A stretch of DNA of 64,000 bases. Origin: Octopus sinensis. Taxonomy: Eukaryota. Below the pieces are notes generated by a model. The model saw only the letters and a program-made list of their open reading frames with translations. It searched no databases and was not told the DNA's origin. The stretch spans positions 42,172,464 through 42,236,463 of the forward strand of contig NC_043011.1 of NCBI RefSeq assembly GCF_006345805.1, given 5' to 3'. A program made the position numbers and the translations under genes. Shown piece by piece: positions 3,684 to 58,302 of the stretch (position 1 is the stretch's first letter; each line of letters begins with the position of its first letter).

Positions 3684-3720
<37 letters not shown>
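1208..3720. repeat. Direct duplication of about 1.05 kb (about 1208-2258 and 2663-3720)
   Basis: The two copies align end to end (e.g. gggtccatgcagtgtcatgggccaaaag; gcagctgatgaagacttgcttcacccgag) and differ mainly by 1-2 nt indels. Confidence 0.9.
2258..2452 (-). mobile_element. Short Penelope-like pLTR-type element with minimal hammerhead-like motif (family also at 12228-12415 minus and 17128-17312 plus)
   Basis: Minus strand 2357-2392 reads CTTT-CTGTTGA-A-GAGC-GTAG-GCTC-GAAAC-GTT-AAAG. The same element body recurs at the other two loci. Confidence 0.6.
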
Positions 3721-3737
<17 letters not shown>

Positions 3738-3866
3738 TATAATATCTATATATATATTTATGTACATATAGATGTATATATATATTACATACATATATAT
3801 ATATCTATATATCTATATATATATATGTTATATATATATAATATATACATAAACATCTATACATAG

Positions 3867-3901
<35 letters not shown>

Positions 3902-3903
3902 AC

Positions 3904-3935
<32 letters not shown>

Positions 3936-4132
3936 TACTAATATATATACATATATATATCTATATATATATATATATATATACATATTATATATATAAT
4001 ATATAACAATATATATATATATATATATATACAATATCTATAACATATATTATACATATCTATATATACAGATATATATATATATGCATATACATATACA
4101 TAATATATATATAAGTATATATAGAGATATTA

Positions 4133-4164
<32 letters not shown>

Positions 4165-4516
4165 ATATTATATATTATTACATATATATATATTATATAT
4201 TATATATATATAATATATCTATATATATATATATATATACATATATATATCTAAATATACATATATACATATATACATATAAATATATATAATATATAAT
4301 ATATATATATTATATATATATAATATATATTATATACAATATATACATATAAATATATATATATATCTATATAATATATATAAAATATACTTATATATCT
4401 ATATATACATATAAATATTATATATCTATATAATATATGATAATATATCTAATACATATATACATCTAATATATATATATATATATATATAGATAACTAT
4501 CTAATATACTATATAC

Positions 4517-4547
<31 letters not shown>

Positions 4548-4642
4548 ATATAATATATATATACATATATACATATAAATATCTATATATATATATATAT
4601 ATAAGTATATAAATATATATATATACATATATCCAATATAAC

Positions 4643-4673
<31 letters not shown>

Positions 4674-5345
4674 ATATATATATATACATATATCCTATAA
4701 AGATATATATATATAATATATATATAATATATATAAATATAATATATCCATATATACATATAAATATATATATCCTATATATAATATAATATATATATAT
4801 ACATATAACCATATAAATATATATAGATTCTATCTATATATCTACATATACATATATACATATATACATATACATATCTAACTATCTATATCTATATCGA
4901 TATATCTAATATAACCATATATAAATAGCTAGATCTACATATCCTATATAATCATATATGTCTCATATCTCAATAAGACCTATATATACATCTATCACAT
5001 ATACATAGATCTATATAATTAATATCTATATATATCACTATACTATCGATACATCTACTACCATCTATAAAAATATATATATATATATACATATATCTAT
5101 ATACATACGATACATCTAAATATATTTCCTCATATATATCTCTATATCGAATATCTCATAAATATCCCTATATTCCATATTATATATATACAAATCTATA
5201 TAATACTATTGTATACAATATACTATGTACCTATATACTATATATATTATATATCTCTATATATATAAATATATATATATACATATATACATAATATATA
5301 TATATATATATATATAGATATATATATATATATATGTGCAAACAT
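3680..5345. repeat. Long noisy (TA)n low-complexity tract
   Basis: About 1.65 kb of TA repeat with irregular single-base insertions, with the look of unpolished long-read consensus. Confidence 0.9.
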
Positions 5346-5719
5346 ATGTATGTATGTATGTATGTATATATATATATATGTGTGTGTGTATGTAAAAATT
5401 TAGATTCAGATGAATATGGTACTTAATTTGAGGCACCAGAATTTAGTACGGTATTATCCATACAATTTCAAAATAAGGTGATTAAAATCAAAATAAGCAA
5501 CAAGGATATCCAGAGGTAATGCAGCACGATCGTTGCAAGCAACTACATTTAATTGAACAATGCAATCATTACATCAATTTAAATGCAGAGCAATCCTCAG
5601 CTGCATAAAGACATAGAATTTAATTAATTTAAAACAGATGGACACATTAGTATAATTTTACCTAAAATCTCCAAGAAGGTAACGAGATAGACAAAGAACA
5701 TGCTGCCTCGACTTAGCTT

Positions 5720-11234: not shown

Positions 11235-11445
11235 TAACTCTCTTTTTAACTCTTTTACTTGTTTCAGTCATTTGACTGCGGCCATGCTGGAGCACTACCT
11301 TTAGTCGAGCAAATCGACCCCGGGACTTATTCTTTGTAAGCCCAGTACTTATTCTATCGGTCTCTTTTTGCCGAACCGCTAAGTGACGGGGACGTAAACA
11401 CACCAGCATCGGTTGTCAAGCAATGCTAGGGGAACAAACACAGAC

Positions 11446-11478
<33 letters not shown>

Positions 11479-11600
11479 CGACAGGCTTCTTTCAGTTTCC
11501 GTCTACCAAATCCACTCACAAGGCATTGGTCGGCCCGGGGCTATAGCAGAAGACACTTGCCCAAGATGCCACGCAGTGGGACTGAACCCGGAACCATGTG
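11235..11600 (-). mobile_element. tRNA/CORE-type SINE family 2 (OR2-like), 5'-truncated
   Basis: Shares cttgggcaagtgtctt, an internal CA/TA microsatellite and the gtaaaagag tail with the full copies at 28506 and 35065. Confidence 0.85.
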
Positions 11601-16637: not shown

Positions 16638-17057
16638 ACTCTTTACTCTTTTCTCTTTTACTTGTTTCAGTCATTTGACTGCGGCCATGCTGGAGCACCG
16701 CCTTTAATCGAGCAACTCGACCCCGGGACTTATTCTTTGTAAGCCCAGTACTTATTCTATCGGTCTCTTTTGCCGAACCGCGAAGTGACGAGGACATAAA
16801 CACACCAGCATCGGTTGTCAAGCAATGCTAGGGGGACAAACACAGACACACAAACATACACGCACACACACATATATAGATATATACATATATACGACGG
16901 GCTTCTTTCGGTTTCCGTCTACCAAATCCACTCACAAGGCTTTCGTCGGCCCGAGGCTATAGTAGAAGACACTTGCCCAAGGTGCCACGCAGTGGGAATG
17001 AACCCGGAACAATGTGGTTGGTAAGCAAGCTACTTACCACACAGCCACTCCTGCGCC
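16638..17057 (-). mobile_element. Full-length SINE family 2
   Basis: Complete head (ggcgcaggagtggctgtgtggtaag on the minus strand) through to the tail. Confidence 0.9.
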
Positions 17058-17102
<45 letters not shown>

Positions 17103-27207: not shown

Positions 27208-27377
27208 GTAAAACGAGTAAATCGTAAAACGAGTAAATCGTAAAACGAGTAAATCGTAAAACGAGTAAATCGTAAAACGAGTAAATCGTAAAACGAGTAA
27301 ATCGTAAAACGAGTAAATCGTAAAACGAGTAAATCGTAAAACGAGTAAATCGTAAAACGAGTAAATCGTAAAACGAG
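27208..27377. repeat. Perfect 16-bp minisatellite (GTAAAACGAGTAAATC) x10.6, next to a Tigger-type TIR at 27399-27423
   Basis: Ten identical units at 27208-27367. The reverse complement of 27399-27423 matches the 15141 Tigger TIR at 21 of 25 positions. Confidence 0.9.
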
Positions 27378-28505: not shown

Positions 28506-28894
28506 GGCGCAGGAGTGGCTGTGTGGTAAGTAGCTTGCTTCCGAACCATATGGTTCCGGGTTCAGTCCCACTGCGTGACACCTTCGGCAAGTGTCTTCTA
28601 CTATAGCCTTGGGCTAACCAAAGCCTCGTGAGTGGATTTGGTAGATGGAAACTGAAAGAAGCCCATCGTATATATGTGTGTGTGTGTGTGAGTATATGTT
28701 TGTGTGTCTGTGTTCCCCTACCATTGCTTGACAACCGATGCTGGTGTGTTTACGTCTCCGTAACTTAGCGGTTCGGCTAAAGAAACCGATAGAATAAGTA
28801 CTAGGCTTACAAAGAATAAGTCTTAGGGTCGATTTGCTCGGCTAAAGGCGATGCTCCAGCATGGCCGCAGTCAAATGACTGAAAAAATAAAAGA
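28506..28894 (+). mobile_element. Full-length SINE family 2 (CORE-type, OR2-like)
   Basis: tRNA-like head gtggctgtgtggtaag...ggttcagtccc, CORE-like ccttcggcaagtgtctt, internal (GT)n, and 3' tail. Confidence 0.9.
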
Positions 28895-35064: not shown

Positions 35065-35460
35065 GGCGCAAGAGTGGCTGTGTGGTAAGTAGCTTGCTAA
35101 CCAACCACATGGTTCCGGGTTCAGTCCCACTGCGTGGCATCTTGGGCAAGTGTCTTCTGCTATAGCCCCGGGCCGACCAATGCCTTGTGAGTGGATTTGG
35201 TAGACGGAAACTGAAAGAAGCCTGTCGTATATATGTATATATATATACGTGTGTGTGTGTGTGTTTGTGCCCCTAGCATTGCTTGACAACCGATGCTGGT
35301 ATATTTACGTCCCCGTCACCTAGCGGTTCGGCAAAAGAGACCGATATAATAAGTACTGGGCTTACAAAGAATAAGTCCCGGGGTCGAGTTGCTCGACTAA
35401 AGGCGGTGCTCCAGCATGGCCGCAGTCGAATGACTAAAACAAGTAAAAGAGTAAAAAGAG
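35065..35460 (+). mobile_element. Full-length SINE family 2
   Basis: Complete head to (gtaaaaga)n tail. Confidence 0.9.
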
Positions 35461-35522
35461 AGTGGCTCCCTCTCTCGTGTGTATATAGATATTTTGGGAG
35501 GATTACTTTTGTACGATTAATG

Positions 35523-38811: not shown

Positions 38812-39247
38812 ATTCTTTTGTTCTTTCACGTTTCAATTGACTGTGGCCATGCTGGAGCACCGCCTTAAAGGATTTTAGTTGAAGAAATCAGTCCCAGAAC
38901 TTATTCTTTGAAAGTCTAGTACTTATTCTATGGTCCGTTTTTTTTTTTGCCAATCCGCTAAGTTACTGGGTACATAAACACACCACCACCGGTTGTAAAG
39001 CGATGGTGCTGGTGGGGGGTCAAACACAGACAGAAAGACGCACACACATAAATATATACACACACACACACACATATATATATATACGACGGGATTCTTT
39101 CAGTTTCCGTCTACCAAATCCACTCACAAGACTTTGGTCGACCCGAGGCTATAGTAGAGGACACTTGCCTATGATGATATGCAGTGGGACTTGAACCCGG
39201 GTCTATGTGGTTGGGAAGCAGGCTTCTTACCACACAGCCACGCCTGC
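38812..39247 (-). mobile_element. Full-length SINE family 2
   Basis: Aligns to the other family 2 copies. Confidence 0.85.
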
Positions 39248-39296
39248 ATCTGTATATATAATATATATATATATATATACATATACATACATACAA

Positions 39297-40580
<1,284 letters not shown>

Positions 40581-41134
40581 AGGTCATGGTAGAAAATTTT
40601 CACGATAGCTGATTTATGGAAAAGATTATGTTAAATTTTTGAAATGCAAATATGTGAATGAAAATTAAGTTCAGACCTCTACATGGTAGGTAGACCTGGT
40701 AGAAATAGCAGCCAAATCTCCCTCCAAATACCCTACTGTATTAATCCGACAATTCTGCTTATTTTGTAGTTTTAATGAGAAACTGTAACTAATGATGAAG
40801 ATAATTAACCCCACAAAGAGGTGAAAGAAGAGAGACAGCATAGCGAAAGTTTTGGCTGACTGTCATCCTGTAGTCCCCTTGTTGCTAGCGAAATGGTATA
40901 TACCGGCTGTGTGAGCAACTGGTTGTTTTAATGGAAGAACAAAGATGGGAATTGCATTAGGAAAAGTTTTAATCGATTTTCTCGATAATTATAGGGAGCT
41001 AGGGGAAAAAATACAAAGCGCATTCCAATCTATGCACCCGTCTCCACATGTGTGCCATTTTTCACGCGAATGCACCCAGCCGTTTCGCTATGAACCTCAA
41101 GAACGAATGCAACGCTCTCCCATGTCCAATTTAT

Positions 41135-41202
<68 letters not shown>

Positions 41203-41219
41203 CATACATATATATATAT

Positions 41220-41262
<43 letters not shown>

Positions 41263-41281
41263 CATATATATATATACATAC

Positions 41282-41336
<55 letters not shown>

Positions 41337-41349
41337 ATATATATATATA

Positions 41350-41408
<59 letters not shown>

Positions 41409-41444
41409 TATATATATGTATGTATGTATGCATGTATATATGTG

Positions 41445-43260: not shown

Positions 43261-45019
43261 TATGTATATGCTTATACGTACATACATGCATATACATAGA
43301 CACACATGCATGTAAAAACACATACACACAAATACAGACATTAAACCCCTTAATATGGGGCGCGTGCGCGTGTATCTGTGTATGTATGTGTGTGTGGTAT
43401 GTGTGTGGTGTGCGTGCGCGCGTGTGTGCACGTGTGTGGTGCGTGTGCATGTGTGGGGGTAGGGTGTGTAACTCTGTAGGTAAAGCAATCCAGTTGTATT
43501 GCTTTAATTCTGAGTCTTGTCGATAATGAATGTTTTGACAACATCTTGGAAGGTTTTTAAGCTGAATATAAACACTCCGAAAGTGTGTATAAATAGGACT
43601 GACTGGGCGGCGACAGCGTGTATGATGTGCAGAGATGATCAATGGTAAAGCAATATGGCACTCGTGCCTTCTCCACTTCATACACCTTCGATTTATCCAT
43701 CCACCCCATTTCTCTCCTCCTTCCCTCTTTCCCCTCTCTCTCTCTCCCCCCTCTCCGTCTCCCTCCCCTTCTCTCCATCTTCCCTCTCCCTGTCTCTCTC
43801 CCTCTGTTTCTCTTTATCTTTCATCTTCCATTTTTTTTTTGGCTATTTCGTCTTCATTCGTTTCTCTTAGTATGTTTGTGGCTTTTAAGCGTTTGTGTCT
43901 CTGCGGATGTTTTTAGTGTACGTGTGTGTGTGTGTGTGTGTATGTGTGTGTATGCGCATGCACGCGTACAGTGGTCTGTGAGTGTCGGTTAAACTTCGTT
44001 CTTTTTTGCTGCTGTATTGTGTCTACGGCCTGGTTTCAATCCACAGCTATTCCGCTTCATTCTATGGATCTTTTGTGTTTGGCTGTCACTTTCCAATTTC
44101 TTCAATTTTTCTTCCAGTTGATTTCATATTTGGCGTATTGGTGTAGTTTTTAAAGTAATCATTGACGTGAAATTCATTTTCGCCATAAATCAATAAGTAA
44201 AGAGTCAATTGCTTTTAAAGTTTGCAAGTTTTGGGTAATTTTAGCCAATCGAAAGCCACAGACATGTATATGCCTATTTCTATAGTAACAAGCCAAGCTG
44301 TCCCATTCTATTAACTTACCATCTGAAGCTAGATCAACTTCTGCTTTTCTGCTGACCTTCCACCGTTAGACATGCTACATCAACACAGACTTCAGTGATG
44401 CTCCATCGATCATACTGGCCCATAGAACAACATGAACATCCATCTGGATCGATGGATGGACCCTTCATTCGAATTTGAACATCAACAAAGTAGTTGTTTT
44501 TTTTTCAGGCGTGTATGTATGTATGTATGTATGTATGTATGTATGTATGTATGTATGTATGTATATATGTATGTATGTATGTATGTATATATGTATGTAT
44601 GTATGCATTTATGTATGTATTTATGTATGTATGTATGTATGTATGTATGTATGTATGTATGTACGTATTTATGTATGTATGTATGTATGTATGTATGCAT
44701 GCATGTATGTATGTATGTAATTATGTATGTATGTATGTATGCATGCATTATGTATGTATGTGTCTGTGTGTGTGTGTCTTTGTATCTGTGTTTGTCCTCC
44801 ACCACCACTTGACAAGCGTAGCTAGATTGGCCTTCATACTGGCAAGACTGGATAAAAGTCCTTCTGTGATTCATCCAATAATGCAGTATCGCCTGATGAA
44901 ATGACTCAATGATGATGACCAATGAGGATGCTCATGGATAATACGGATTATACTGTATTAATTCCAAGGATACCGACTCTGATGTTAAAATCATGCGAAT
45001 TGTGGAAACGCGCGTAGCA

Positions 45020-45101
45020 TATGGCGTAGTGGTTAAGAGCGCGGGCTACTAACTAACCCCAAGATTCCGAGTTCGATTCCAGTTCGATAATAATAATAAT
45101 A

Positions 45102-45137
<36 letters not shown>

Positions 45138-45316
45138 CAACAACATAGAAAAATACTTTTAGAATGAGAACCCAGGTTCGAAATTTCCTCCAAGACAGCT
45201 GATGAAGGCTGGAGGTTATATCAGCCGAAACATTGTGTTAAGAACAAACAAGATGAGGACAAATATCCATCAAATGTAAATAATGTACATAATTCCTCAT
45301 CTCTTAAATATAGAAG
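45020..45316 (+). mobile_element. tRNA-headed SINE with internal (AAT)n and a hammerhead-like motif in its 3' part
   Basis: A-box TGGCGTAGTGG (45022-32) and B-box GTTCGATTC (45071-79). Motif at 45194-45239: GACAG-CTGATGA-A-GGCTG-loop-CAGCC-GAAAC-ATT-GTGTT. Flanked by a gcgtagc duplication. Confidence 0.75.
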
Positions 45317-45372
45317 TGCGTAGCGATGTATTAAATATTTATAAATTCCATCCTAGAATTATTATTACATAC

Positions 45373-45469
<97 letters not shown>

Positions 45470-45686
45470 TACGGCAAATAAGAAAAGAGGATATAAAATC
45501 GACAGACATCAGCCAGTAAACATTCAAGTATGTCTATTTATTCAATTGTAAAGGATGAATACACACACATGTATGAGTTATACAGATTAGCGAGTGGAAA
45601 AAAGCTGGTAACTGCATAGACAAGGGTGTGAATACATTTACATTTATATTTTTGCTCATTTGTTTCTATATACTTATATGTATTCA

Positions 45687-46020
45687 GTGAAGGCGCGTGG
45701 CTCAGTGATTAGAACGTCGAGCTTACGATCGTGAGGTTGTGAGCTCGAATCCCGGACCGTGCTGCGTGTTGTGTTCTTGAGCAAGACGCTTTATTTCACG
45801 TTGCTCCAGTTAACTCAGCTGTAGAAATGAGTTGCGATGTCACAGGTGCCAAGCTGTATCGGCCTTTGCCTTTCCCTTGGATAACACTGGTGACTGGAGA
45901 GAGGAGGCCGGTATGCATGGGCGACTGCTGGTCTTCCATAAACCACCTTGCCCAGACTTGTGCCTCAGAGGGTAATTCTCTAGGTGCAAGCCCATGGTCA
46001 GTGTCTGACCGAAGGGGGTT
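45687..46020 (+). mobile_element. tRNA-SINE family 3, full length, with an alternative 3' tail
   Basis: Head ggcgcgtggctcagtg...gctcgaatccc and CORE-like ttgagcaagac. The tail is related to about 18990-19090. Confidence 0.8.
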
Positions 46021-46370
46021 ACAAACAATCACACAATATGTATTCACAACCTTGTCTATGCAGTTACCAACTTTTTCTACTCGCTAATCTGTGTAACTCA
46101 TACATGTGTGTGTGTGTATTCATCTAATACAATTGAATGAATAAATAGACACACTTGAATGTTTACTGGCTGATGTCTGTCGATTGTATATCCTCTCTGT
46201 TTTCTCATTTGCCGCATAAATCAAGAGTAAATCACTCTTTTCCCCCCGCCCAGATATAACACTCAATTGCGAGATTGCCATGCACTTGACTGTGAATAAT
46301 TGGGTACACTACCAGCACTATTTTGGATAGGCACTATCCCTTAGTTGGTTTCTCAACCTCTAACTCACAC

Positions 46371-46418
<48 letters not shown>

Positions 46419-46519
46419 TATATATTATATATATATATATATATGTAGGTCCCGGGTTGATTCGGGGTTAACCACAGTAAATAAGGTACTCAATACATAG
46501 CAGAGTAAAATTAATTTAT

Positions 46520-46630
46520 TATATAGAAGGAGCTTCTACAGGACTAGAACTGTTTCATTCAAGAGAAATCTTCAGGAAGCTTCCTGAAGATTTCTCTTGA
46601 ATGAAACAGTTCTAGTCCTGTAGAAGCTCC

Positions 46631-46639
<9 letters not shown>
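46520..46639. repeat. Perfect 120-bp palindrome with no spacer, containing a hammerhead-like core
   Basis: Centred on aagctt at 46577-46582. The right arm reads CTGAAGA (46584-90), GAAAC (46603-07), GTC (46615-17). Confidence 0.9.
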
Positions 46640-46672
<33 letters not shown>

Positions 46673-46947
46673 GCATGTACAGAGAGAGAGAGAGGGAGGG
46701 AGAGGAAAAGACAGTCTTCTTTCAGTTTCCATCTATTACACTTGTTTACAAAATTTTTTTTAGCTCACATCTCCCATTTTAATTATACTGCATATCAATT
46801 CAAAATATAATGTGTTTATTTCATCTGTTACAAATGCATATTACAGAAAAGAAAAAGAAACCACAGAAAGCAGCATAGATACAGAACATTCACGGAACTA
46901 AATTACTTGGATAATACAATACACACATATCATAATACAGCAGACAG

Positions 46948-47320
46948 TCAGAAATGAGTTTTTTTCGACGATCTTATGTACTTTGCCTCCGGGATGTTAC
47001 GCAAGAGCATCCAGCAAAAGTCCTCCTTCATATTGGAGGTTCTACTTGCCTTCGTAGTTTCTCTCCATCTTAGTAATATCTTGGTGGAGCCTTTCTCCAT
47101 GCTCATCACTCACTGCTCCGAGCTTCGGAGAGAAGTTGAGGTGTGAGTGGAAAAAGTGAATTTTAGTGATATTCAGCATCCCATATCCTCATAAGACTGT
47201 AACAGCTTCTCGGTACACTCTTGGTAATCTAGTACCCGTGTGTTACCAAGAAGTTGAGATAGGAGTGGAGAAAGTGAATTTTGAGTGATATTCAGTATTC
47301 CATATCCTCATAAGACTGTA
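46948..47320 (-). pseudogene. C-terminal part of a Chapaev-type (CMC superfamily) transposase
   Basis: Minus strand: FLGN...LLQSYEDMGC*ISLKIHFFHSHLNF...LGAVSDEHGERLHQDITKME...AKYIRSSKKTHF*, with the stop at 46948-50. Confidence 0.85.
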
Positions 47321-50300
47321 GAAAATTTTCCCCAAAAATTTTTCGAAAATTTTCACCGAAAATATTACCCGAAAATTTTTCGAAAATTGGCACCGCTGGC
47401 TTTCCATACTTTGTGATTTGGGCACCGCTGGCTTTTCATACTTTGTGATTTGGGCACCACTGGCCTTCCATACTTTGTGATTTTGGCACCGCTGGCCTTC
47501 CATACTTTGTGATTTTGGCACCGCAAATGTTATCCGACAATGTTTCAAAAATTTTACCCAAAAAGTTTTCGAAAATTTTCACCAAAAATTTTACCCAAAA
47601 AGTTTTCGAAAATTTTCACCAACAATTTTCCCCAAAAATTTTCCGAATATTTTCACCGAAAATTTTACCCGAAAATTTTACCGAAAATTTTGCGAAAATT
47701 ACCGAAAATTTTACCCAAATATTTTCCGAAAATTTTAACCAGAAAGTTTTCGAAAATTTTCATTAAAAACTTTACCCAAAAATTTACCGAACATTTCACC
47801 CAAAAAGTTTTCGAAAATTTACTCCAAAAACTTTTCGAAAATTTTCAACGAAAATTTTACCCAAAAATTTTTACCGAAATTTTTCAAAAATTTTTCGAAA
47901 ATTTTACCCAAAAATTTTCCGAATAATTTCACCCAAAAATTTTGCGAAAATTTTCACAGAAAATTTTACACAAAAATTTACCGAAAATTTTAATTTTCCC
48001 TAAAAAATTTTGCGAAAATTTTCACAGAAAATTTTACACAAAAATTTACCGAAAATTTTAATTTTCCCTAAAAAATTTTGCGAAAATTTTTGGAAAATTG
48101 GCACCGCTGGCTTTCCATACTTTGTGATTTGGGCACCGCTGGCTTTTCATGCTTTGTGATTTGGGCACCACTGGCCTTCCATACTTTGTGATTTGGGAAC
48201 CGCTGGCCTTCCATACTTTGTGATTTTGGCACCGCAAATGTTATCCGACAATTTTCCGAAAATTTTATCCAAAAAGTTTTCGAAAATTTTACCCAAAAAT
48301 TTTCCAAATATTTTCACCGAAAATTTTCCCCAAAAATATTGCGAAAATTACCGAGAATTTTAAGCAGAAAGTTTTCGAAAATTTTCACCGAAGACTTTAC
48401 CCAAAAATTTACCGAAAATTTCACCTAAAAAGTTTTCGAAAATTTTCACAGAAAATTTTATCCAAAAATTTTCCGAAAAATTTCACCGAAAATTTTAACC
48501 AAAAAGTTTTCGAAAATTTTCACCGAAAACTTTACCCAAAAATTTACCGAAAATTTTAACCTAAAAAGTTTTCGAATATTTTCACCGAAAATTTTACCCA
48601 AAAATTTTGCGAAAATTTTCACCGAATATTTTCTGAAAATTTTCACCGAAAATTTTACCCAAAAATTTTCCGAAAATTTCACCTAAAAAGTTTTCGAAAA
48701 TCTTCCCCAAAAATTTTTCGAAAATTTCACTGAAAATTTTCTCCAAAAGAGGGTGCCGAAAGAGATCAAAGAGGGTACCGACAGAGATCAAAGAGGTTAC
48801 CGAAAGAGATGAAAGAGGACTACCGAAAGAGATCAAAGAGGGTGTCGAAAGAGATCAAAGAGGTTGCCGACATAGATCAAAGAGGATTACCGAAAAAGAT
48901 CAAAGATGGTGCCGACAGAGATCAAAGAGGGTGCCGACATAGATCAAAGAGGAGTACCGAAAAAGATCAAAGAGGTTACCGACAAATCAAAGAGGGTGCC
49001 GACAGAGATCAAAGAGGAGTACCGAAAAAGATCAAAGAAGGTGTCGACAGAGATCAAAGAGGGTGCCGAAAGAGATGAAAGAGGACTACCAAAAGAGATC
49101 AAAGAGGGTGTCGAAAGAGATCAAAGAGGGTGCCGACAGAGATCAAAGAGGTTGCCGATATAGGCCAAAGAGGAGTACCGAAAAAGATCAAAGAGGGTGC
49201 CGACAGAGACCAAAGAGGGTGCCGACAGAGATCAAAGAGAATACCGAAAAGATCAAAGACAAATACCGAAAGAGATCAAAGAGGGTACCGACAGAGATGA
49301 AAGAGGGTGTCGACAGAGATCAAAGAGAGTGCCGAAAGAGATCAAAGAGGAGTGCCGAAAGAGAGGAAAAAGGAGTACCGAAAAAGATCAAAGAGGTTGC
49401 CGACAGAGACCAAAGAGGAGTACCGAAAAAGATCAAAGAGGAGTGCCGAAAGAGATGAAAAAGGAATACCGAAAGAGATAAAAGGGGGGCCGACAGAGAT
49501 CAAAGAGGAGTACCGAAAGAGATGAAAAAAAGGTGCCGACAGAGATCAAAGTTGCCAAAAGAGATCAAAGAGTACCGAAAAAATCAAAGAGGAGTACCAA
49601 AAACGATCTAAGAGGATGCCGACAGAGATCAAAGAGGGTACCGAATGTGATCAAAGAGTGTGCCGGCATAGATCAAAGAGGAGTACCGAAAAAGATCAAA
49701 GAGGGTGCCGACAGAGATCAAAGAGGAGTACCGAAAATATCAAATAGGGTGCCGAAAGACATCAAAGAGGAGTACCGAAAAAGATCAAAGAGGATGCCGA
49801 ATGTGAACAAAGAGGAGTACCGTAAAAGATCAAAGAGGGTGCCGACAGAGATCAAATAGGGTGCCGAAAGACATCAAAGAGGAGTGCCGAAAGAGATGAA
49901 AAAGGAGTACCGAAAGAGATAAAAGAGGGGCCGACATAGATCAAAGAGGAGTACCGAAAGAGATGAAAAAGCAGTACCGGAAAGATCAAAGAAGATGCCA
50001 ACAGATATCAAAGAGGATGCCGAAAGAGATCAAAGGAGGGCCGACAGAGATCAAAGGGGAGTACCGAAAGAGATCAAAGAGGGTACCGACAGAGATCAAA
50101 GAGGTTGCCGACAGACCAAAAAGGAGTACCGAAAAAGATCAAAGAGGGTGCCGACATAGACCAAAGAGGAGTACCGAAAAAGATCAAAGATGGTGCCGAC
50201 AGAGATCAAAGAGGGTGCCGAAATAGATCAAAGAAGGGCCGACAGAGATCAAAGAGGAGTACCGAAAGAGATCAAAGAGGGTACCGACAGATCAAAGAGG

Positions 50301-53300
50301 GTACAGACAGAGATCAAAGAGGGGTGTCGAAAGAGATGAAAGAGGACTACCGAAAGAGATCAAAGAGGGTGTCGAAAGAGATCAAAGAGGTTGCCGACAT
50401 AGATCAAAGAGGAGTACCGAAAAAGATCAAAGAGGTTGCCGACAGAGACAAAGAGGGTGCCGACAGAGATCAAAGAGGAGTACCGAAAGAGATGAAAGAG
50501 GACTACCAAAAGAGATCAAAGAGGGTGTCGAAAGAGATCAAAGAGAGTGCCTACAGAGATCAAAGAGGTTGCCGATATAGGCCAAAGAGGAGTACCGAAA
50601 AAGATCAAAGAGGTTGCCGACAGAGACCAAAGAGGGTGCCGACAGAGATCAAAGAGGTTGCAGACATAGGCCAAAGAGGAGTACCGAAAAAGATCAAAGA
50701 GGGTGCCGACAGAGATGAAAGAGGGTGCCGAAAGAGATCAAAGAGGAGTGCCGAATGAGATGAAAAAGGAGTACCGAAAAAGATCAAAGAGTTTGCCGAC
50801 AGAGATCAAAGAAGGTGCCGACAGAGACCAAAGAGGAGTACCGAAAAAGATCAAAGAGGGTGCCGACAGAGATCAAAGAGGAGTACCGACAAAGATAAAA
50901 AAAGGTGCCGACAGAGATCAAAGAGAGTGCCAAAAGAGATCAAAGAGGAGTACCGAAAAAATCAAAATGGAGTACCAAAAAGATCAAAGAGGATGCCGAT
51001 AGATCAAAGAGGGTGCCGAAAGACATCAAAGAGTGTGTCGGCATAGATCAAAGAGGAGTACCGAAAAAGATCAAAGAGGGTGCCGACAGAGATCAAAGAG
51101 GAGTACCGAAAATATCAAATAGGGTGCCGAAAGACATCAAAGAGGAGTACCGTAAAAGATCAAAGAGGGTGCCGACAGAGATAAAATAGGGTGCCGAAAG
51201 ACATCAAAGAGGAGTGCCGAAAGAGATGAAAAAGCAGTACCGAAAGAGATCAAAGAAGATGCCGACAGATATCAAAGAGGATGCCGAAAGAGATCAAAGG
51301 GGAGTACCGAAAGAGATCAAAGAGGGTACCGACAGAGATCAAAGAGGTTGCCGACATAGACCAAAAAGGAGTACCGAAAAAGATCAAAGAAGGTGCCGAC
51401 ATAGACCAAAGAGGAATACCGAAAAAGATCAAAGATGGTGCCGACAGAGATCAAAGAGGGTGCCGAAATAGATCAAAGAAGGGCCGACAGAGATCAAAGA
51501 GGAGTACCGAAAAAGATAAACGAGGAGTACCGAAAGCGATCAAAGAGGGTACCGACAGAGATCAAAGAGGGTACAGACAGAGATCAAAGGGGGGTGCCGA
51601 AAGAGATGAAAAAGGAGTACCGAAAGAGATCAAAGAGGGTGCCGAATGTGAACAAAGAGGGTGCCGACATAGATCAAAGAGGAGTACCGTAAAAGATCAA
51701 AGAGGGTGCCGACAGAGATCAAATAGGGTGCCGAAAGACATCAAAGAGGAGTGCCGAAAGAGATGAAAAAGGAGTACCGAAAGAGATCAAAGAGGGTGCC
51801 GAATGTGAACAAAGAGGGTGCCGACATAGATCAAAGAGGAGTACCGTAAAAGATCAAAGAGGGTGCCGACAGAGATCAAATAGGGTGCCGAAAGACATCA
51901 AAGAGGAGTGCCGAAAGAGATGAAAAAGGAGTACCGAAAGAGATGAATAAGCAGTACCGAAAGAGATCAAAGAGGTTGTCGAAAGAGATCAAAGAGGGTA
52001 CCGACATAGACCAAAGAGGTGTACCGAAAGAGATGAAAGAAGAGTACCGAAAAGATCAAAGATGCCGACAGATATCAAAGAGGATGCCGAAAGAGATCAA
52101 AGGAGGGCCGACAGAGATCAAAAGGGAGTACCGAAAAAGATCAAAGAGGGTGCCGACAGAGATCAAAGAGGGTGCTGAAATAGATCAAAGAAGGGCCGAC
52201 AGAGATCAAAGAGTACCGAAAAAGATCAACGAGGTGTACCGAAAGAGATCAAAGAGGGTACCGACAGAGATCAAAGAGGGTACAGACAGAGATCAAAGAA
52301 GGTACAGACAGACATCAAAGATGGGTGCCGAAAGATGAAAAAGGAGTACCGAAAGAGATCAAAGAGGTTGTCGAAAGAGATCAAAGAGATGTACCGAAAA
52401 AGATCAAAGGGTACCGACAGAGATCAAAGAGGGTGCCGACAGAGATCAAAGAGGGTGCCGACAGAGATCAAAGAGGGTGCCGACAGAGATCAACTAGTGT
52501 GCCGAAAGAGATGAAAAAGGAGTACCGAAAGAGATCAAAGAGGTTGTCGAAAGAGATCAAAGAGGGTCCGACAGAGATCAAAGAGGGTACCGACAGAGAT
52601 CAAAGAGGAGTACCGAAAAAGATCAAAGAGGGTGCCGAAAGAGATCAAAGAGGTTGCCGACATATACCAAAGAGGAGTACCGAAAAAGATCAAAGAGGGT
52701 GCCGGCAGAGATCAAAGAGGGTTCCGACAGAGATCAAAGAGGGTGCCGAAAGAGATGAAAGAGGAGTACCGAAAAAGATCAAAGAAGGTGCCGACAGAGA
52801 TCAAAGAGGGTACCGACAGAGATCAAAGAGGGGTGCCGAATGAGATGAGAAAGGAGTACCATAAGAGATCAAAGATGTTGTCGATAGAGATCAAAGAGGG
52901 TGCCGACAGAGATCAAAGAGGTTGCCGACAGAGACCAAAGAGGAGTACCGAAAAAGATCAAAGAGGAGTACCGAAAAAGATCTATGAGGGTGCCGAAAGA
53001 GATCAAAGAGGAGTGCTGAAAGAGATGAAAAAGGAGTATCGAACGAGATCAAAGAGGTTGTCGAAAGAGATCAAAGTGGGTGCCGACAGAGATCAAAGAG
53101 GTTGCCGACAGAGATCAACGAGGAGTGCCGAAAAAGATCAAAGAGGGTACCGACAGAGATCAAAGAGGGTGCCGACAGAGATCAAATAGGTGCCGAAAGA
53201 GATCAAATAGGAGTGCCGAAAGAGATGAAAAAGGTACCGAAAGATATCAAAGAGGGGCCGGCACAGATCAAAGAGGGTACCGGAAGAGATGAAAGAGGAG

Positions 53301-55625
53301 TACCGAAAAAGATCAAAGAAGGTGCCGACAGAGATCAAAGAGGGTACCGACAGAGATCAAAAGGGAGTACCGAAAAAGATCAAAGAGGAGTACCGAAAGA
53401 GATCAAAGAGGTTGTCGAAAGAGATCAAAGAGGGTGCCGACAGAGATCAAAGAGGTTGCCGACAGAGACCAAAGAGGAGTACCGAAAAAGATCAAAGAGG
53501 AGTACCGAAAAAGATCTATGAGGGTGCCGAAAGAGATCAAAGAGGAGTGCTGAAAGAGATGAAAAAGGAGTATCGAACGAGATCAAAGAGGTTGTCGAAA
53601 GAGATCAAAGTGGGTGCCGACAGAGATCAAAGAGGTTGCCGACAGAGATCAAAGAGGAGTGCCGAAAAAGATCAAAGAGGGTACCGACAGAGATCAAAGA
53701 GGGTGCCGACAGAGATCAAATAGGTGCCGAAAGAGATCAAATAGGAGTGCCGAAAGAGATGAAAAAGGTACCGAAAGATATCAAAGAGGTTGTCGAAAGA
53801 GATCAAAGAGGGGCCGGCACAGATCAAAGAGGGTACCGACAGAGATCAAAGAGGAGTACCGAAAAAGATCAAAGAGGGTGCCGAAAGAGATCAAAGAGCG
53901 GCCGACAGAGATCAAAGAGGGTGCCGACAGAGATCAAAGAGGGTACCCAAAAATTTACCAAGAATTTCACCTAAAAAGTTTTAGCCAAAATTTTACCCAA
54001 AAATTTTTAAGAAAATTTTCCCCCAAAATTTGTCGAAAATTTTCACCGAAATCTTTACCCAAAAATTTACCGAAAATTTTAACCCAAAAAGTTTTCGAAA
54101 ATTTTCACCGAAAATTTTACCCAAAACTTTTCAGAAAATTTGTCGAAAATTTTACCCAAAAATTTTCACCGAAATTTTTCAAAAATTTTTCGAAAATTTT
54201 CACCGAGAATTTTCCCTAAACTTTTTGGGTGAAATTTTCGAAAAATTTATGGGAAAAATTTTTTGGTAAAATTTCACCTAAAAAGTGTTCGAAAATTTTC
54301 ACTGAAAATTTTACCCAAAAATTTTCACCGAAATTTTTCAAAAATTTTTCGAAAATTTTACCCAAAAAGTTTTCGAATATTTTCACCGAAAATTTTACCA
54401 AAAAATCTTGCGAAAATTACCCAAAATTTTAACCAGAAAGTTTTCGAAAATTTTCACCGAAAACTTTACCCAAAAATTTACCAAAAATTTCACATAAAAA
54501 GTTTTCGAAAATTTTCACAGAATATTACCCCAAAAATATTACGAAAATTTTCCCCAAAAATTTGTCGAAAACTACACCAGAAAATTTACCGAAAATTTTA
54601 ACCTAAAAGTTTTTTGAAAATTTTACCCAAAAATTTTCCGAAAATTTTACCCAAAAATTTGTCGAAAATTTTATCCCAAAATTTTCCAAACATTTTTACC
54701 GAAATTTTTCAAAAATTTTTCGAAAATTTTCACTGAAAATTTTACTTCAAAATTTTCCGAAAATCTTCACTGAGAATTTTCCCCAAAAATTTTCCGAATA
54801 TTTTCACCGAAAATTTTACCCAAAAATTTTGCGAAAATTTTCACCGAAAATTTTAACCAAAAAGTTTTCGAAATTTTCACCGAAAACTTTACCCAAAAAT
54901 TTTCAGAAAATTTTCCCCTAAAATTTCACCCAAAAATTTTCACCGAAATTTTTCAAAAATTTTTCGAAAATTTTCACCGAAATTTTCCCTAAAAAATTTT
55001 CGACAAATTTTTGGGGAAAATTTTCGAAAACTTTCTGGGTGAAATTTTCGAAAAATTTATGGGAAAAATTTTTTGGTAAAATTTCACCTAAAAAGTGTTC
55101 GAAAATTTTCACTGAAAATTTTCTCCAAAAATTTTTCGAGAATTTTCATCGAAAATTTTACCCAAAAATTTTCCGAAAATTTTCCCCTAAAATTTCACCC
55201 AAAAATTTTCACCGAAATTTTTCAAAAATTTTTCGAAAATTGGCACCGCTGGCTTTCCATACTTAGTGATTTGGGCACCGCTGGCTTTTCATACTTTGTG
55301 ATTTTGGCACCGCAAATGTTTTCCGACAATTTTCCGAATATTTTACCCAAAAAATTTTTCGAAAATTTTCACCGAAAATTTTCTCCAAAAATTTTTCGAT
55401 GTTCACCGAAAATTTTACCCAAAAATTTTTCGGAAATTTTCACCGAAAATTTTACCCAAAAAGTTTTCGACTATTTTACGCAAAATTTTTCCGAAAATTT
55501 CACCAAAAAATTTTCGAATATTTTCACCGAAAATTTTACCCAAAAATTTTGCGAAAATTTTCACCGAAAATTTTAACCAAAAAGTTTTCGAAAATTTTCA
55601 CCGAAAACTTTACCCAAAAATTTTT
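47321..55625. repeat. 8.3-kb composite satellite: AT-rich A blocks (gaaaattttcaccgaaaattttaccc), 32-bp B cassettes (about 47389-47540, 48100-48250, 55242-55330) and a purine-rich 22-23-bp C array (48746-53946)
   Basis: B period of 32 bp verified (ggcacc at 47389, 47421, 47453, 47485, 47517). C consensus is agagatcaaagagggtgccgac with variant units. Confidence 0.95.
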
Positions 55626-56777
55626 GGAAGGCAGCGCCTTTTTTGTTCATGGTCTTCACGAAATTCTTCATTAAACCAAGCTTGATATGAATAGAAAGAA
55701 GCACCTTGTTCATGTCCACCAGAGGATTTTCTTGGACACTGTGTTCACCATGCACGAAAGTGTTCCTAGATCCCCTGTCTTGTAGTGCTTGGACACAGCC
55801 CGACTGTCCCAGAGAGAGAGAGGAAGCAACAGTATTTTGTGAAACCCGCTTGCATACCCATAAGAAGCTCAGTGACCTTGAGGTCCCCACAGAAACACCA
55901 CTGGTACTGGTTGTACCTGACAACTTCCTAAAGGAACTCGATATTGCCATACGACTCCTTCAGATGGACTGAGTAGGCAACGGGAATGCTGAGGTGTTTA
56001 TTCCCATTGTACAGAAGCACAGCCTTCACTTGGAAGAGTCTATGAAAAGACGCCAGTCTGAGGGATTGTGTGGGAAACCAAGAAAGCTAAACAAGCCAGA
56101 GACATTTGTGCAGTAGCACAACTTGTTTTCTATGTCAAAGAATGAAGCAAAGTCATGGTTCTGTGTCCTGAAACTGGTGACCCTCACGTCTGCTTTGACC
56201 AGGTTCTACTGCTTAAGCTGGGATGCCAGGAGCTCTGACTACTGCTTAGATAGATGCAAATCACGGACTAGGTCATTCAAGTCTTCTTGCGTTATTCAGT
56301 GGGGTTCATTGCCACTTGCTCCTGATGATGAAAGAAGGAGATCCTTATTTGTTGGGAGTGAAGGGACAGGGAGATCATCTGAGTGGGGGGCAGGTTGGGA
56401 TAGCTGAGGGAAGGTTGGGATATTTGATATTTTTTTCTAGAAGAAGCATTGAAACCTTTTATATTTGTTAGACAAAAATAACAATCATCTGCATGGCTTC
56501 GTGGCTCTCTCCAGACCATCGGGACAGCAAAGTGGAAGGCTGCTTTCTTGCCGTTAAACCATGCAGTTAGTCCATTGTAGCAAGGCTTACAACAGATGTG
56601 TGGGGCCCAGGATTTTTACTCATCTCCAATTTTATAGTCAAAATAATGAAAGTAAGCAATTCTCAGGAGAGAAATAAATGTTCGGCGCTGTGCAACTGTC
56701 GTGAAATCCCCACACACGTAGCAGAATGAATTTGTCTTGTTGATGCATCCTCGGTGTTTTGACGTGCCTGAAGCCAT
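55626..56777 (-). pseudogene. N-terminal and catalytic part of the same Chapaev-type transposase (frameshifts and stops)
   Basis: ATG at 56777. Motifs in order: NSFCYVCGDF, KSWAPHICC, MVWREPRSHADDCYFC, SDWRLFIDSSK, CGDLKV, GFTKYCCF, HIKLGLMKNFVK, GAAF. The Chapaev3 assignment is from recall of these motifs. Confidence 0.85.
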
Positions 56778-58302
56778 TGTAGAGATATTTAACATATGTA
56801 TTACAAAAATCTGGAAAACAAAATAAAAACTGATCATATATATGGCTACGTGAATGGTCGCAAAATCATAATAATGTACATCTCAAAAACTAGAGGTGAC
56901 GAGTGAAAACTAGTTTTGTATCTGAAATCAGCATCCCAAAATTAAGCTAGAACTGAACTATTTTTCTGTTTGCCTCAATTTCTCTGTAAATCAAATAATT
57001 ATTCTATTTCAGTCAAATGACATATTGTTTATGTGATGTGTGATTCTTTTCCGGTCATCGACGAAAGCATGACTATTATGCAACTTTGATAGTTTCTCAG
57101 TTGTTCTGGCAAGATGTCTTTATTTGGTAATTCTGTTATTAATACAGAAATGTAAAGACTGAATTGTTTGTGCTTGGGATAGAATGACAAATAGTGTTTG
57201 TTATTACACTAGATACTCTAAGTCCAACCTCCTATCAAGGTCAGCTTCGCATTTCCGAGTTGATAAAATAAAATAGAAAAACACTGTACCAGTTCATTGC
57301 AGCGGATTGGCAGAACTGTAAGGACGTCGGACCGGATGCCTTATAGTACTTGTTCCGGCTCTTAGCGTTTTGTGTTCAAATCCCACCATATTAGATTTAA
57401 TCCGTCACCACAGTTTAACTTCATGGTACCTTGGATAGGTCCTGGGTACTTTGGATACCTTTAACAGAGATTACCCTGCTGCAAGCAGTCCTCTCGCACC
57501 TTCCAACTCATCTCAGAGTCTCTGGTGAAGAGTTGTTGGCATTGTGTTTCTTTTTGATTAAAAATAAACATCCACTTTGAATCGACATTTTGTGCAAGAA
57601 ATAAGCTGACAATTTTAAGATAATTTCCGGCAGTCGCTGGCAACTAGGAGGCGGTGCTGATTGTTATGAGTCAACCTTACTGCTACGTCTGTGTCCTTGA
57701 ATGAGTGAAAGTAAGGAAGGAACCCGTATACGTCTTCGCTGGGGAGTGGCGGACTGTGAAACGGTCCGTCAAGAAACTCCTGCCTTTTCTACACTGTGAA
57801 GTAAGATTGTATTTACATGTTTGTTCCCCACCACCATTTGTCAACTGGATTGAACCCAGAACCATGTGATTTGGAAACGAACGCGTGAAAGGAATATTGA
57901 GCCCATTGAAGAGCACACAAAAACTCTTATATCGTAAGAGAGAGAGAGAGAGAGAGGAGTTTGATATGTTGTAATATCTTTCTCAATTATTTTGTTTATT
58001 TATCATAACGTTTAAATACATCTGCATTGCAAGAATCTAATCTACATAGCATCTTATTATAAGCAGATTGTGTGTGTGTGTGTGTGTGTATGAACGATAA
58101 TGAAATATATTGTCTTTAATAGAAAAGAAGAGAGAGCAAACTGCCAAAAGACGAAACTTGAAACTATAAAATAAATAAACGAAGAGGGAATATAACAATT
58201 TGTGTTTTTAAATAGTTAAAATTACTCTTTTTCACACACACATCTAATGCGCGCGCGTGTCTCTGTGTGTGTCCATATGCGTACAGAGGCGGTTCAAATA
58301 TC

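What the first reader, a model, noticed from the sequence alone, without database searches (positions are those of the whole stretch)
47321..55625. 8.3-kb three-component satellite sitting exactly in the gap of a transposase gene
Seen in sequence: the Chapaev-type transposase reads continuously on the minus strand to ...NFVKTMNKKGAAF (about 55626) and resumes at FLGN...SDEHGER (47250 downward). The intervening segment is absent and is replaced by an ordered array A-B-A-B-A-C-A-B-A. All three B cassettes share the same entry (gaaaattggcacc) and exit (ggcaccgcaaatgtt.tccgacaat) junctions, so they were amplified as modules with their A flanks. Inference: this looks like a complex satellite arising inside a DNA transposon rather than the insertion of a single known element.
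Basis: partly seen in the sequence, partly recalled or inferred. Interest (0 to 1): 0.7.

Follow-up and report, generated by a model that had tools for sequence, protein, structure and literature searches.

The report
Composite satellite inside a dead transposon
An 8.3-kb block built from three kinds of short tandem repeats sits inside a decayed Chapaev-type DNA transposon of an octopus-like genome. The same repeat families also occur elsewhere in Octopus vulgaris without the transposon, so this is ordinary satellite DNA that landed and grew there, not something the transposon produced.

Summary
Window 47321-55625 is an ordered array A-B-A-B-A-C-A-B-A:
- A: degenerate 12-13-mer, GAAAATTTTCACC.
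- B: 32-mer, in three cassettes.
- C: 22-mer, about 235 copies.

None of these repeats occurs elsewhere in the window. The flanks are the two halves of one decayed Chapaev3-type transposon on the minus strand. About 163 bp (56 aa) of its transposase gene is missing at the array site.

The B cassettes were indeed amplified locally with their A flanks. But the repeats did not arise from the transposon:
- A C-like 22-mer array (9 kb) lies on one O. vulgaris chromosome.
- An A-B composite array (8 kb) lies on another.
- Neither has the transposon nearby.
- Four other copies of the transposon carry no array.
- No monomer resembles the transposon above chance.

Most likely, pre-existing satellite sequence was captured during break repair inside the transposon and then grew by unequal exchange. 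This is an ordinary kind of feature and of low interest.

The parts
46822..47248 (-). 3' part of the decayed Chapaev3-type transposon. It holds the transposase C-terminal remnant (FLGN...SDEHGERLHQDI...) and the probable 3' end.
   Evidence: Translation. Protein alignment A1. blastn to intact relatives over 46867-47253 at about 80%. The 3' terminus near 46822 is only weakly aligned.
47249..47320 (-). Partial tandem duplicate of transposon sequence 47131-47201 (LQSYEDM..ISLKIHFLHS.LNF), lying directly against the array.
   Evidence: 65/72 identical to 47131-47201. Both copies are about 83% identical to L001 7170-7252. Junction read.
47321..47388 (+). A1: 12-13-bp A repeat (GAAAATTTTCACC type).
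   Evidence: TRF; sequence.
47389..47541 (+). B1: four 32-bp units (GGCACCGCTGGCCTTCCATACTTTGTGATTTG) plus the tail GGCACCGCAAATGTTATCCGACAAT.
47542..48099 (+). A2: A repeat with 37-bp higher-order periodicity. Contains a 68-bp unit repeated 2.3 times at 100% identity (47935-48090).
48100..48252 (+). B2: four 32-bp units plus the same tail. Together with its flanks it duplicates B1 at an offset of 711 bp.
   Evidence: 47370-47592 vs 48081-48303, 95.5%.
48253..48745 (+). A3: A repeat (periods 24, 37 and 61 bp).
   Evidence: 48270-48453 matches 54339-54522 in A4 at 93%.
48746..53951 (+). C: 22-bp unit AAAGAGGGTGCCGAAAGAGATC, about 235 copies, with 45- and 67-bp higher-order periods and internal segmental duplications (for example 52833-53266 = 53367-53800 at 95%). 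Purine-rich on the + strand. Open in all three + frames only because of its base composition.
53952..55241 (+). A4: A repeat with an internal duplication of about 810 bp and two short patches of A in inverted orientation (54218-54275, 55005-55085).
55242..55330 (+). B3: two 32-bp units plus the tail GGCACCGCAAATGTTTTCCGACAAT.
   Evidence: B3+A5 (55242-55623) aligns with B2+A3 (48164-48545) at 84.6%.
55331..55625 (+). A5: A repeat, ending against the transposon with 0-2 bp of ambiguous overlap.
55626..56997 (-). 5' part of the same transposon. It holds the decayed 5' terminal inverted repeat (about 56997) and the transposase N-terminal two thirds, with stops and frameshifts, ending ...NFVKTMNKKGAAF.

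Best explanation
The interval is a non-coding composite satellite (minisatellite-type) array. It is built from two repeat families that already existed in the octopus genome: an A-B composite family and a C 22-mer family.

Proposed history:
1. A Chapaev3-type cut-and-paste transposon inserted here and decayed.
2. A double-strand break inside it was repaired with template switching. The break came either from abortive gap repair while the element was still being excised, or from a random break in the dead copy.
3. That repair deleted about 163 bp. It copied 72 bp of nearby transposon sequence as filler. It also copied in a seed of satellite sequence, joined at 1-3 bp microhomologies.
4. The seed then grew in place by unequal exchange or replication slippage. 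This first multiplied a B+A module of about 700 bp, giving three cassettes with identical junctions. It also expanded the C block inside one A stretch to 5.2 kb.
5. Segmental duplications continue to turn the array over.

The array most likely has no function for the transposon or the host.

Shown: the anatomy, the deletion and duplication at the junction, the module duplications, and the independent occurrence of both families elsewhere. Inferred: the order of events, the repair mechanism, and in-place growth as opposed to arrival as a large block.
For: - One transposon split once. Both flanks are colinear, in the same orientation, and equally diverged (about 80-83%) from intact relatives. 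Only 56 aa (163 bp) is missing. A recognisable 5' end lies at about 56997.
- The junctions carry repair signatures rather than transposition signatures: a target deletion, a 72-bp duplicate of adjacent transposon sequence (90% identical), and junction overlaps of 3 bp or less.
- Both families exist independently. Window C aligns only to L003 (O. vulgaris OX597818.1; 22-mer differing at 2 of 22 positions; 76-77% over 2.3-2.5 kb). Window A-B-A aligns only to L004 (OX597819.1; about 72% over about 870 bp spanning a B cassette). Neither locus has the transposase.
- Four other transposon copies (L001, L002, L005, L006) are contiguous, about 2.45 kb, and free of arrays.
- No monomer is similar to the transposon above shuffles.
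- Amplification was local. B1 and B2 with their flanks are 95.5% identical. B junctions are 3/3 identical here and 5/5 identical but of a different type in L004. C holds a 434-bp duplicate at 95%. A2 holds a 68-bp unit repeated 2.3 times at 100%.
- Relative ages fit. The junction duplicate has diverged 10%, the module duplicates about 4.5%.
Against: - Only one extra locus per family could be reached, and only through gene models that happen to translate the arrays. Genome-wide abundance is therefore unknown. So is the direction of spread, whether from this locus outward or into it.
- The source species of the window is not known. The comparison loci may come from another species.
- The repair mechanism is inferred from junction anatomy alone. 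The junction sequences are old and partly ambiguous.
- Array length and order rest on a single assembly.
Confidence: 0.65

Rival explanations
1. One reading: the three repeats originated de novo inside this transposon copy, from its own or filler sequence. Any other loci are later offshoots.
For: - The array sits exactly where transposase sequence is missing.
- All cassettes in the window share locus-specific junctions.
- The direction of spread between loci cannot be determined from my data.
Against: - No monomer resembles the transposon above shuffled controls.
- Four other copies of the transposon lack any array.
- A-B and C occur separately at two other loci, with different partners and different junction types. 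A shared pre-existing repeat library explains that more easily than export from this one locus.
Confidence: 0.08
2. The array is the cargo of another mobile element that inserted into the transposon, for example a Helitron/Helentron-type or MITE-type element with internal tandem repeats, as described in bivalves.
For: - In oysters, satDNA-like arrays are dispersed by non-autonomous Helentrons (PMC7492417; review PMC10048060).
- The A-B association recurs at a second locus.
Against: - The array begins and ends directly in A monomers. There is no conserved non-repeat terminus, hairpin or inverted repeat.
- The target lost 163 bp and gained a 72-bp duplicate, instead of showing a clean insertion or a target-site duplication.
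- The flanks of L004 and L003 share no common terminal sequence with the window array.
- Helentron arrays are usually short, up to about 10 repeats.
Confidence: 0.08
3. The whole 10-kb unit is a non-autonomous Chapaev derivative that captured satellite DNA and was itself mobilised. It would then be a vehicle that spreads the satellite.
For: Both transposon ends appear to be retained. Internal-deletion derivatives with filler DNA are the usual origin of non-autonomous cut-and-paste elements (established knowledge of Ac/Ds and P elements, from memory).
Against: - The ends are decayed in the window. The 3' end is barely recognisable, and the target duplication cannot be confirmed.
- No second copy is present in the 64-kb window.
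- The junction-spanning ORFs are not on record in any other assembly.
- The two other satellite loci lack transposon sequence.
Confidence: 0.04
4. Assembly artefact: the array's length, order, or its join to the transposon halves results from mis-assembly of repetitive reads.
For: The array consists of long, low-complexity, internally duplicated repeats. There is a 100% identical 68-bp duplication. No read data were available.
Against: - A chimeric join would not place the two halves of one transposon copy, colinear and in the same orientation, on either side.
- The blocks are diverged enough (65-95% identity) to be assembled from long reads.
- Comparable 8-9-kb arrays occur in the chromosome-level O. 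vulgaris assembly.
Confidence: 0.07

Closest known systems
Dispersed satellite DNA / 'satDNA library' arrays in mollusc genomes (reviewed in PMC10048060; oyster examples in PMC7492417 and PMC8268682)
   Same: - Short-unit tandem repeats form arrays of a few kilobases scattered in euchromatin.
- The same monomer families recur at unrelated loci.
- Each array is homogenised locally.
- The arrays are closely associated with DNA transposons.
   Different: - The units here are very short (12-13, 22 and 32 bp), and three families are interleaved in one array.
- The array is not carried between the conserved ends of a Helentron or MITE. It interrupts a Chapaev transposon, with a deletion and a filler duplication.
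- I found no published description of these octopus monomers.
Internal-deletion derivatives of cut-and-paste transposons with filler DNA, formed by abortive gap repair or template switching (Ac/Ds, P, Mutator; from memory, not checked in a paper here)
   Same: - Both element ends are kept.
- An internal segment is lost.
- A short copy of nearby element sequence and some foreign sequence fill the gap.
- The junctions sit at microhomologies.
   Different: - The filler here is, or has become, an 8.3-kb satellite array rather than tens of base pairs.
- The timing, during excision repair or after the element died, cannot be told.
Chapaev3 transposons (Garfield, Merrow, Conan; PMC4079192)
   Same: The flanking element's relatives match these hallmarks:
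- about 2.45 kb long, with a single gene of about 555-565 aa;
- CAC...GTG termini;
- TAA/TTA 3-bp target duplications;
- C(2)C, LH and H(4)H motifs.
   Different: - The window copy is a pseudogene with stops, frameshifts and the internal gap.
- No phylogeny against Repbase Chapaev3 sequences was possible.
- Pfam has no model for the family.
TE-derived satellites (tandemised transposon fragments; McGurk and Barbash 2018, cited in PMC10048060)
   Same: A satellite array and a transposon are physically joined.
   Different: The monomers show no similarity to the transposon. This is not tandemised transposon sequence, apart from the 1.6-copy 118-bp duplication at the left edge.

Membership tests
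Chapaev3 group, CMC superfamily (flanking transposon) | Terminal inverted repeats with invariable 5'-CAC ... GTG-3' termini (PMC4079192) | tested here: met
   Most relatives begin CACTGGTTTACAAAG and end TTTGTAAACCAGTG, with point changes at individual ends. The window's 5' end aligns to this but is mutated (TTGATTTACAGAG). The window's 3' end is only weakly recognisable.
Chapaev3 group, CMC superfamily (flanking transposon) | 3-bp target-site duplication of consensus TWA | tested here: met
   - L005: TAA/TAA.
- L001: TTA/TTA.
- L002: TTA/TAA.
- L006: TAT/TAT.
- Window copy: inconclusive; TTA on the 5' side, with the 3' side decayed.
Chapaev3 group, CMC superfamily (flanking transposon) | Transposase motifs C(2)C, LH and H(4)H; length about 556 aa | tested here: met
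   Alignment A1 shows CFLC(LWD), (PP)LHIKLG and HFLHSH conserved in the homologues that cover these regions. Intact proteins are 547-595 aa. The window copy keeps IHIKLG and HFFHSH. Its C(2)C region is destroyed by a frameshift.
Chapaev3 group, CMC superfamily (flanking transposon) | DDE catalytic triad / demonstrated relationship to curated Chapaev transposases | tested here: inconclusive
   No Pfam family matches the window fragments or intact homologues. No solved structure is related. Repbase was not available for a phylogeny.
Satellite / minisatellite DNA family | Head-to-tail tandem arrays of a defined monomer | tested here: met
   TRF results:
- A: 12-13 bp with a 37-bp higher-order period, 63-72% matches.
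- B: 32 bp, 2.2-4.2 copies, 90-94% matches.
- C: 22 bp, 234.7 copies, 79% matches.
Satellite / minisatellite DNA family | The same monomers at several unlinked genomic loci | tested here: met
   A C-like array lies at O. vulgaris OX597818.1:51.12 Mb (L003). An A-B array lies at OX597819.1:69.38 Mb (L004). Only one extra locus per family was reachable.
Satellite / minisatellite DNA family | High genomic abundance / heterochromatic or centromeric location | not testable with these tools
   No octopus genome could be searched at the DNA level. The metagenome scan for B gave 0 hits.
Transposon-derived satellite | Monomer sequence homologous to part of the transposon | tested here: not met
   The best local alignments of A, B, C and the B-tail to four transposon copies fall within the distribution for 200 shuffled monomers.
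Helitron/Helentron- or MITE-borne tandem repeats | Array enclosed by conserved element termini, and a precise insertion without loss of target sequence | tested here: not met
   - The array ends in A monomers on both sides.
- The target lost about 163 bp and gained a 72-bp duplicate.
- The array edges of L003 and L004 are unrelated to those of the window.

The most novel reading that the evidence does not exclude
A-B and C arrays may be actively dispersing satellites that seed new loci by being copied into double-strand breaks, for example from extrachromosomal circles or by template switching. Excision-repair gaps of cut-and-paste transposons would be a preferred entry point. The bent, palindromic A core (GAAAATTTTC) might promote the breakage or recombination that interleaves A with B and C. 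This locus would then be a datable snapshot of satellite seeding in a cephalopod genome, whose satellites have not been described.
Probability: 0.1. Interest if true: 0.45.

Novelty: new member of a known kind. Interest (0 to 1): 0.2.

Why it matters
The finding mostly matters as annotation.
- It gives consensus monomers and junctions for three octopus tandem-repeat families. As far as the searchable literature shows, these families have not been described.
- It shows that at least two O. vulgaris "hypothetical protein" gene models are translations of such arrays.
- It offers one clean example, with a transposon as a built-in ruler, of how satellite sequence enters a unique site (deletion, filler duplication, microhomology) and then grows by module duplication.

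It does not change how satellites or Chapaev transposons are understood.

Tried and rejected
- Pfam on the window's transposase fragments and on four intact homologues: no family.
- PDB sequence search with the family profile: nothing.
- Rfam on 46500-57300: nothing.
- Representative-protein search with the A-B3-A ORF: 0 hits. The query is highly repetitive, so this says little.
- Exact-pattern scan of JGI metagenome contigs for the B unit: 0 hits.
- Exact look-up of the two junction-spanning ORFs in public assemblies, to find independent support for the junctions or the source species: not on record.
- I suspected that truncated relatives P0002 and P0003, which end near the same point of the protein, might carry arrays. 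Their loci (L005, L006) hold contiguous copies with a frameshift or stop only.
- By eye, the transposon sequence at the right breakpoint (GCGCTGCCTTCCA) resembles part of the B unit (CCGCTGGCCTTCCA). The shuffle test shows this is within chance. I rejected it as evidence of origin or of homology-guided capture.
- Two independent truncated transposon copies flanking an older array: rejected. The halves are colinear, in the same orientation and equally diverged, and miss only 163 bp.
- Literature searches for described octopus or cephalopod satellites found nothing relevant.
Full report
**What is there.** Tandem Repeats Finder on 45000-58000 and on the whole window shows that 47321-55625 consists entirely of three tandem-repeat types.
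- A is a degenerate 12-13-bp unit (GAAAATTTTCACC, GAAAATTTTACCC and similar). It has 24-, 37- and 61-bp higher-order periods and 63-72% matches.
- B is a 32-bp unit, GGCACCGCTGGCCTTCCATACTTTGTGATTTG, with 90-94% matches.
- C is a 22-bp unit, AAAGAGGGTGCCGAAAGAGATC, in 234.7 copies with 79% matches and 45- and 67-bp higher-order periods.

The order is:

| Block | Coordinates |
|---|---|
| A1 | 47321-47388 |
| B1 | 47389-47541 |
| A2 | 47542-48099 |
| B2 | 48100-48252 |
| A3 | 48253-48745 |
| C | 48746-53951 |
| A4 | 53952-55241 |
| B3 | 55242-55330 |
| A5 | 55331-55625 |

The ten B units, the three exact entry junctions (GAAAATTGGCACC) and the three exit tails (GGCACCGCAAATGTTNTCCGACAAT) are all far beyond chance, with 0 expected in shuffles. 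All are confined to this interval. All 107 C units within 3 mismatches of the consensus lie in 48746-53951. Composition changes sharply between blocks: A has 25-30% GC, and C has 45% GC with strong purine skew.

**The flanks.** On the minus strand the flanks translate to a decayed transposase-like gene. The upstream part runs from about 56740 down to 55626 and ends ...LGLMKNFVKTMNKKGAAF. The downstream part starts at 47250 (FLGNTRVLDYQECTEKLLQSYEDMGC*ISLK...SDEHGERLHQDI...). Both parts contain stops and frameshifts, so the gene does not read continuously.
- A protein search found 1120 homologues at E<=1e-10. Intact ones are about 550-595 aa, occur in insects, a frog, a leech and elsewhere, and are all unnamed.
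- In the alignment (A1) the window copy lacks exactly the 56 residues between ...GAAF and FLGN.
- At the DNA level, against an intact relative (L001), the right flank stops at L001 6961 and the left flank resumes at 7125, so about 163 bp is missing.

**Is it Chapaev?** Four relatives were fetched from one ENA assembly (L001, L002, L005, L006). They are about 94% identical to each other over about 2.45 kb. They begin CACTGGTTTACAAAG, end TTTGTAAACCAGTG, and are flanked by 3-bp duplications: TAA, TTA, TTA/TAA and TAT. The proteins carry CFLC, LHIKLG and HFLHSH. These are the hallmarks given for Chapaev3 elements: CAC...GTG termini, a TWA target duplication, the C(2)C, LH and H(4)H motifs, about 556 aa and about 2.3 kb (PMC4079192). 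Pfam has no model for the family and no solved structure is related. In the window the 5' end aligns at about 56997. The 3' end is probably near 46822 (weak).

Window 47249-47320, directly left of the array, is a second copy of 47131-47201. The two are 65/72 identical, and both are about 83% identical to the same stretch of L001. In the transposon's sense orientation the sequence reads:

...GGCGCTGCCTTCCAA | reverse-complemented array | ACAGTCTTATGAGG...CTCAACTTCTT | GGTAACACAC...ACAGTCTTATGAGG...CTCAACTTCTC...

So the left edge is a truncated upstream copy of a 118-bp tandem duplication. Overlaps at the junctions are 1-3 bp. A deletion, a filler duplication and foreign sequence together are the signature of break repair with template switching. 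They are not the signature of transposition.

**Did the repeats arise from the transposon?** I tested this in four ways.
1. None of the four other transposon copies contains A, B or C.
2. Local alignment of the A, B, C and B-tail consensus sequences to four transposon copies scores no better than 200 shuffled monomers. That includes a similarity at the right breakpoint that had caught my eye.
3. A protein search with a 217-aa ORF read from the C block found one hit, an O. vulgaris "hypothetical predicted protein".
   - Its locus is L003, at OX597818.1:51.12 Mb. It holds a 9-kb array of the 22-mer GATCAAAGACGGTGCCGACAGA, the same unit with 2 differences.
   - That array is interleaved with a 10-mer, CAAACCGGAT.
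   - It has no A, no B and no transposase.
4. A search with B translated on both strands found one hit, another O. vulgaris gene model.
   - Its locus is L004, at OX597819.1:69.38 Mb. It holds an 8-kb A-B composite array with five B cassettes, the same 37-bp A higher-order unit and a roughly 4-kb higher-order duplication.
   - It has no C and no transposase.

In blastn, window C matches only L003 (76-77% over 2.3-2.5 kb). Window A-B-A matches only L004 (about 72% over about 870 bp across a B cassette). Both families therefore exist independently of this transposon. The caveat is that I could reach only loci that happen to be annotated as proteins, one per family.

**Local amplification.**
- 47370-47592 and 48081-48303 are 95.5% identical, against a 70-85% A background.
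- B3+A5 aligns with B2+A3 at 84.6% over 396 bp.
- The A/B junctions are identical in all three window cassettes. In L004 all five cassettes share a different pair of junctions: entry ACCCAATAATGGCTTTCCATAC and exit CCATACTTTTTGGGGAAAATTTT. Each array was therefore homogenised or amplified locally.
- Further segmental duplications exist:
  - 52833-53266 = 53367-53800 in C, at 95%.
  - 48270-48453 (A3) = 54339-54522 (A4), on either side of C, at 93%.
  - An internal duplication of about 810 bp in A4.
  - A 68-bp unit repeated 2.3 times at 100% identity in A2.
- The junction duplicate (10% diverged) is older than the module duplicates (about 4.5% diverged). This fits seeding first and growth later.

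**Most likely mechanism (confidence about 0.65).** A Chapaev3 copy inserted and decayed. A break inside it was repaired with template switching, either during abortive gap repair after excision or as a random break. The repair deleted 163 bp, duplicated 72 bp of nearby element sequence and copied in satellite sequence from a pre-existing A-B (and C) family. Unequal exchange and slippage then expanded it to 8.3 kb. The anatomy and the independent loci are shown. The mechanism and the order of events are inferred. I see no evidence of function. The long ORFs in C exist because the purine-rich unit has no stop codons in the + frames. Rfam finds nothing.

**Rivals.**
- De novo origin in the transposon (0.08).
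- Cargo of a Helitron/Helentron- or MITE-like element, as in oysters (PMC7492417). The missing termini and the target deletion argue against it (0.08).
- A mobilised non-autonomous Chapaev derivative carrying the array (0.04).
- Assembly artefact (0.07).

Two independent transposon fragments flanking an older array is rejected on colinearity.

**Source and limits.** The window shares dispersed repeats of about 400 bp with the O. vulgaris loci at 78-93%, so it comes from an octopod-like genome. The species is not established. No octopus genome could be searched at the DNA level. The metagenome scan, the representative-protein search and look-ups of junction-spanning ORFs were all empty. Literature searches found no description of octopus satellites. 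A recent O. vulgaris repeat annotation lists, among recently active elements, one CACTA-Mirage-Chapaev family with a single insertion (PMC13282606).

**Verdict.** The feature is an ordinary composite satellite array that entered a dead Chapaev3 transposon by a repair event and grew there. It is a new member of a known kind and of low interest.

Noticed in passing
L003 10001-10753 (P0121); L004 10001-13271 (P0122); L003 1-7468: O. vulgaris gene models annotated as 'Hypothetical predicted protein' are translations of C-like and B/A tandem arrays, so they are probably spurious. A third model of 840 aa also runs through the C-like array in L003.
   Followed up: partly
window 47935-48090: A 68-bp unit inside A2 is repeated 2.3 times at 100% identity. 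This is either a very recent duplication or an assembly effect.
   Followed up: no
window 54218-54275 and 55005-55085: Two short patches of A repeat lie in inverted orientation inside A4. They belong to an internal duplication of about 810 bp and create imperfect inverted repeats within the array.
   Followed up: partly
window 47321-48745 and 53952-55625: The core of the A monomer, GAAAATTTTC, is a perfect 10-bp palindrome of the A4T4 type, which is known for intrinsic DNA bending. 35 of the 36 exact copies in the 64-kb window lie in the A blocks (0.19 expected).
   Followed up: partly
window 27208-27377: A perfect tandem array of the 16-mer GTAAAACGAGTAAATC, 10.6 copies at 100% identity.
   Followed up: no
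window 3665-5379: A 1.7-kb degenerate (TA)n tract. Several other long dinucleotide and tetranucleotide microsatellites occur, for example 41132-41441 (TA)n and 44512-44761 (TGTA)n.
   Followed up: no
window 11241-11600, 16642-17065, 28506-28894, 35065-35461, 38874-39256: Five copies of a dispersed repeat of about 400 bp (possibly a SINE) match O. vulgaris L003 12080-12501 at 78-88%. This is the main evidence that the window comes from an octopod-like genome.
   Followed up: no
L004 9100-10260 and 17100-17700: The O. vulgaris A-B array has incorporated about 210 bp of unique flanking sequence into its higher-order repeat. This parallels the duplicated transposon fragment at the edge of the window array.
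   Followed up: partly
L001, L002, L005, L006 (ENA ERZ21867824): An assembly filed under a metagenome-style accession holds several Chapaev3 copies, about 94% identical to each other, on contigs of 70-500 kb. These are evidently host (probably cephalopod or other animal) DNA from a recently active family.
   Followed up: no
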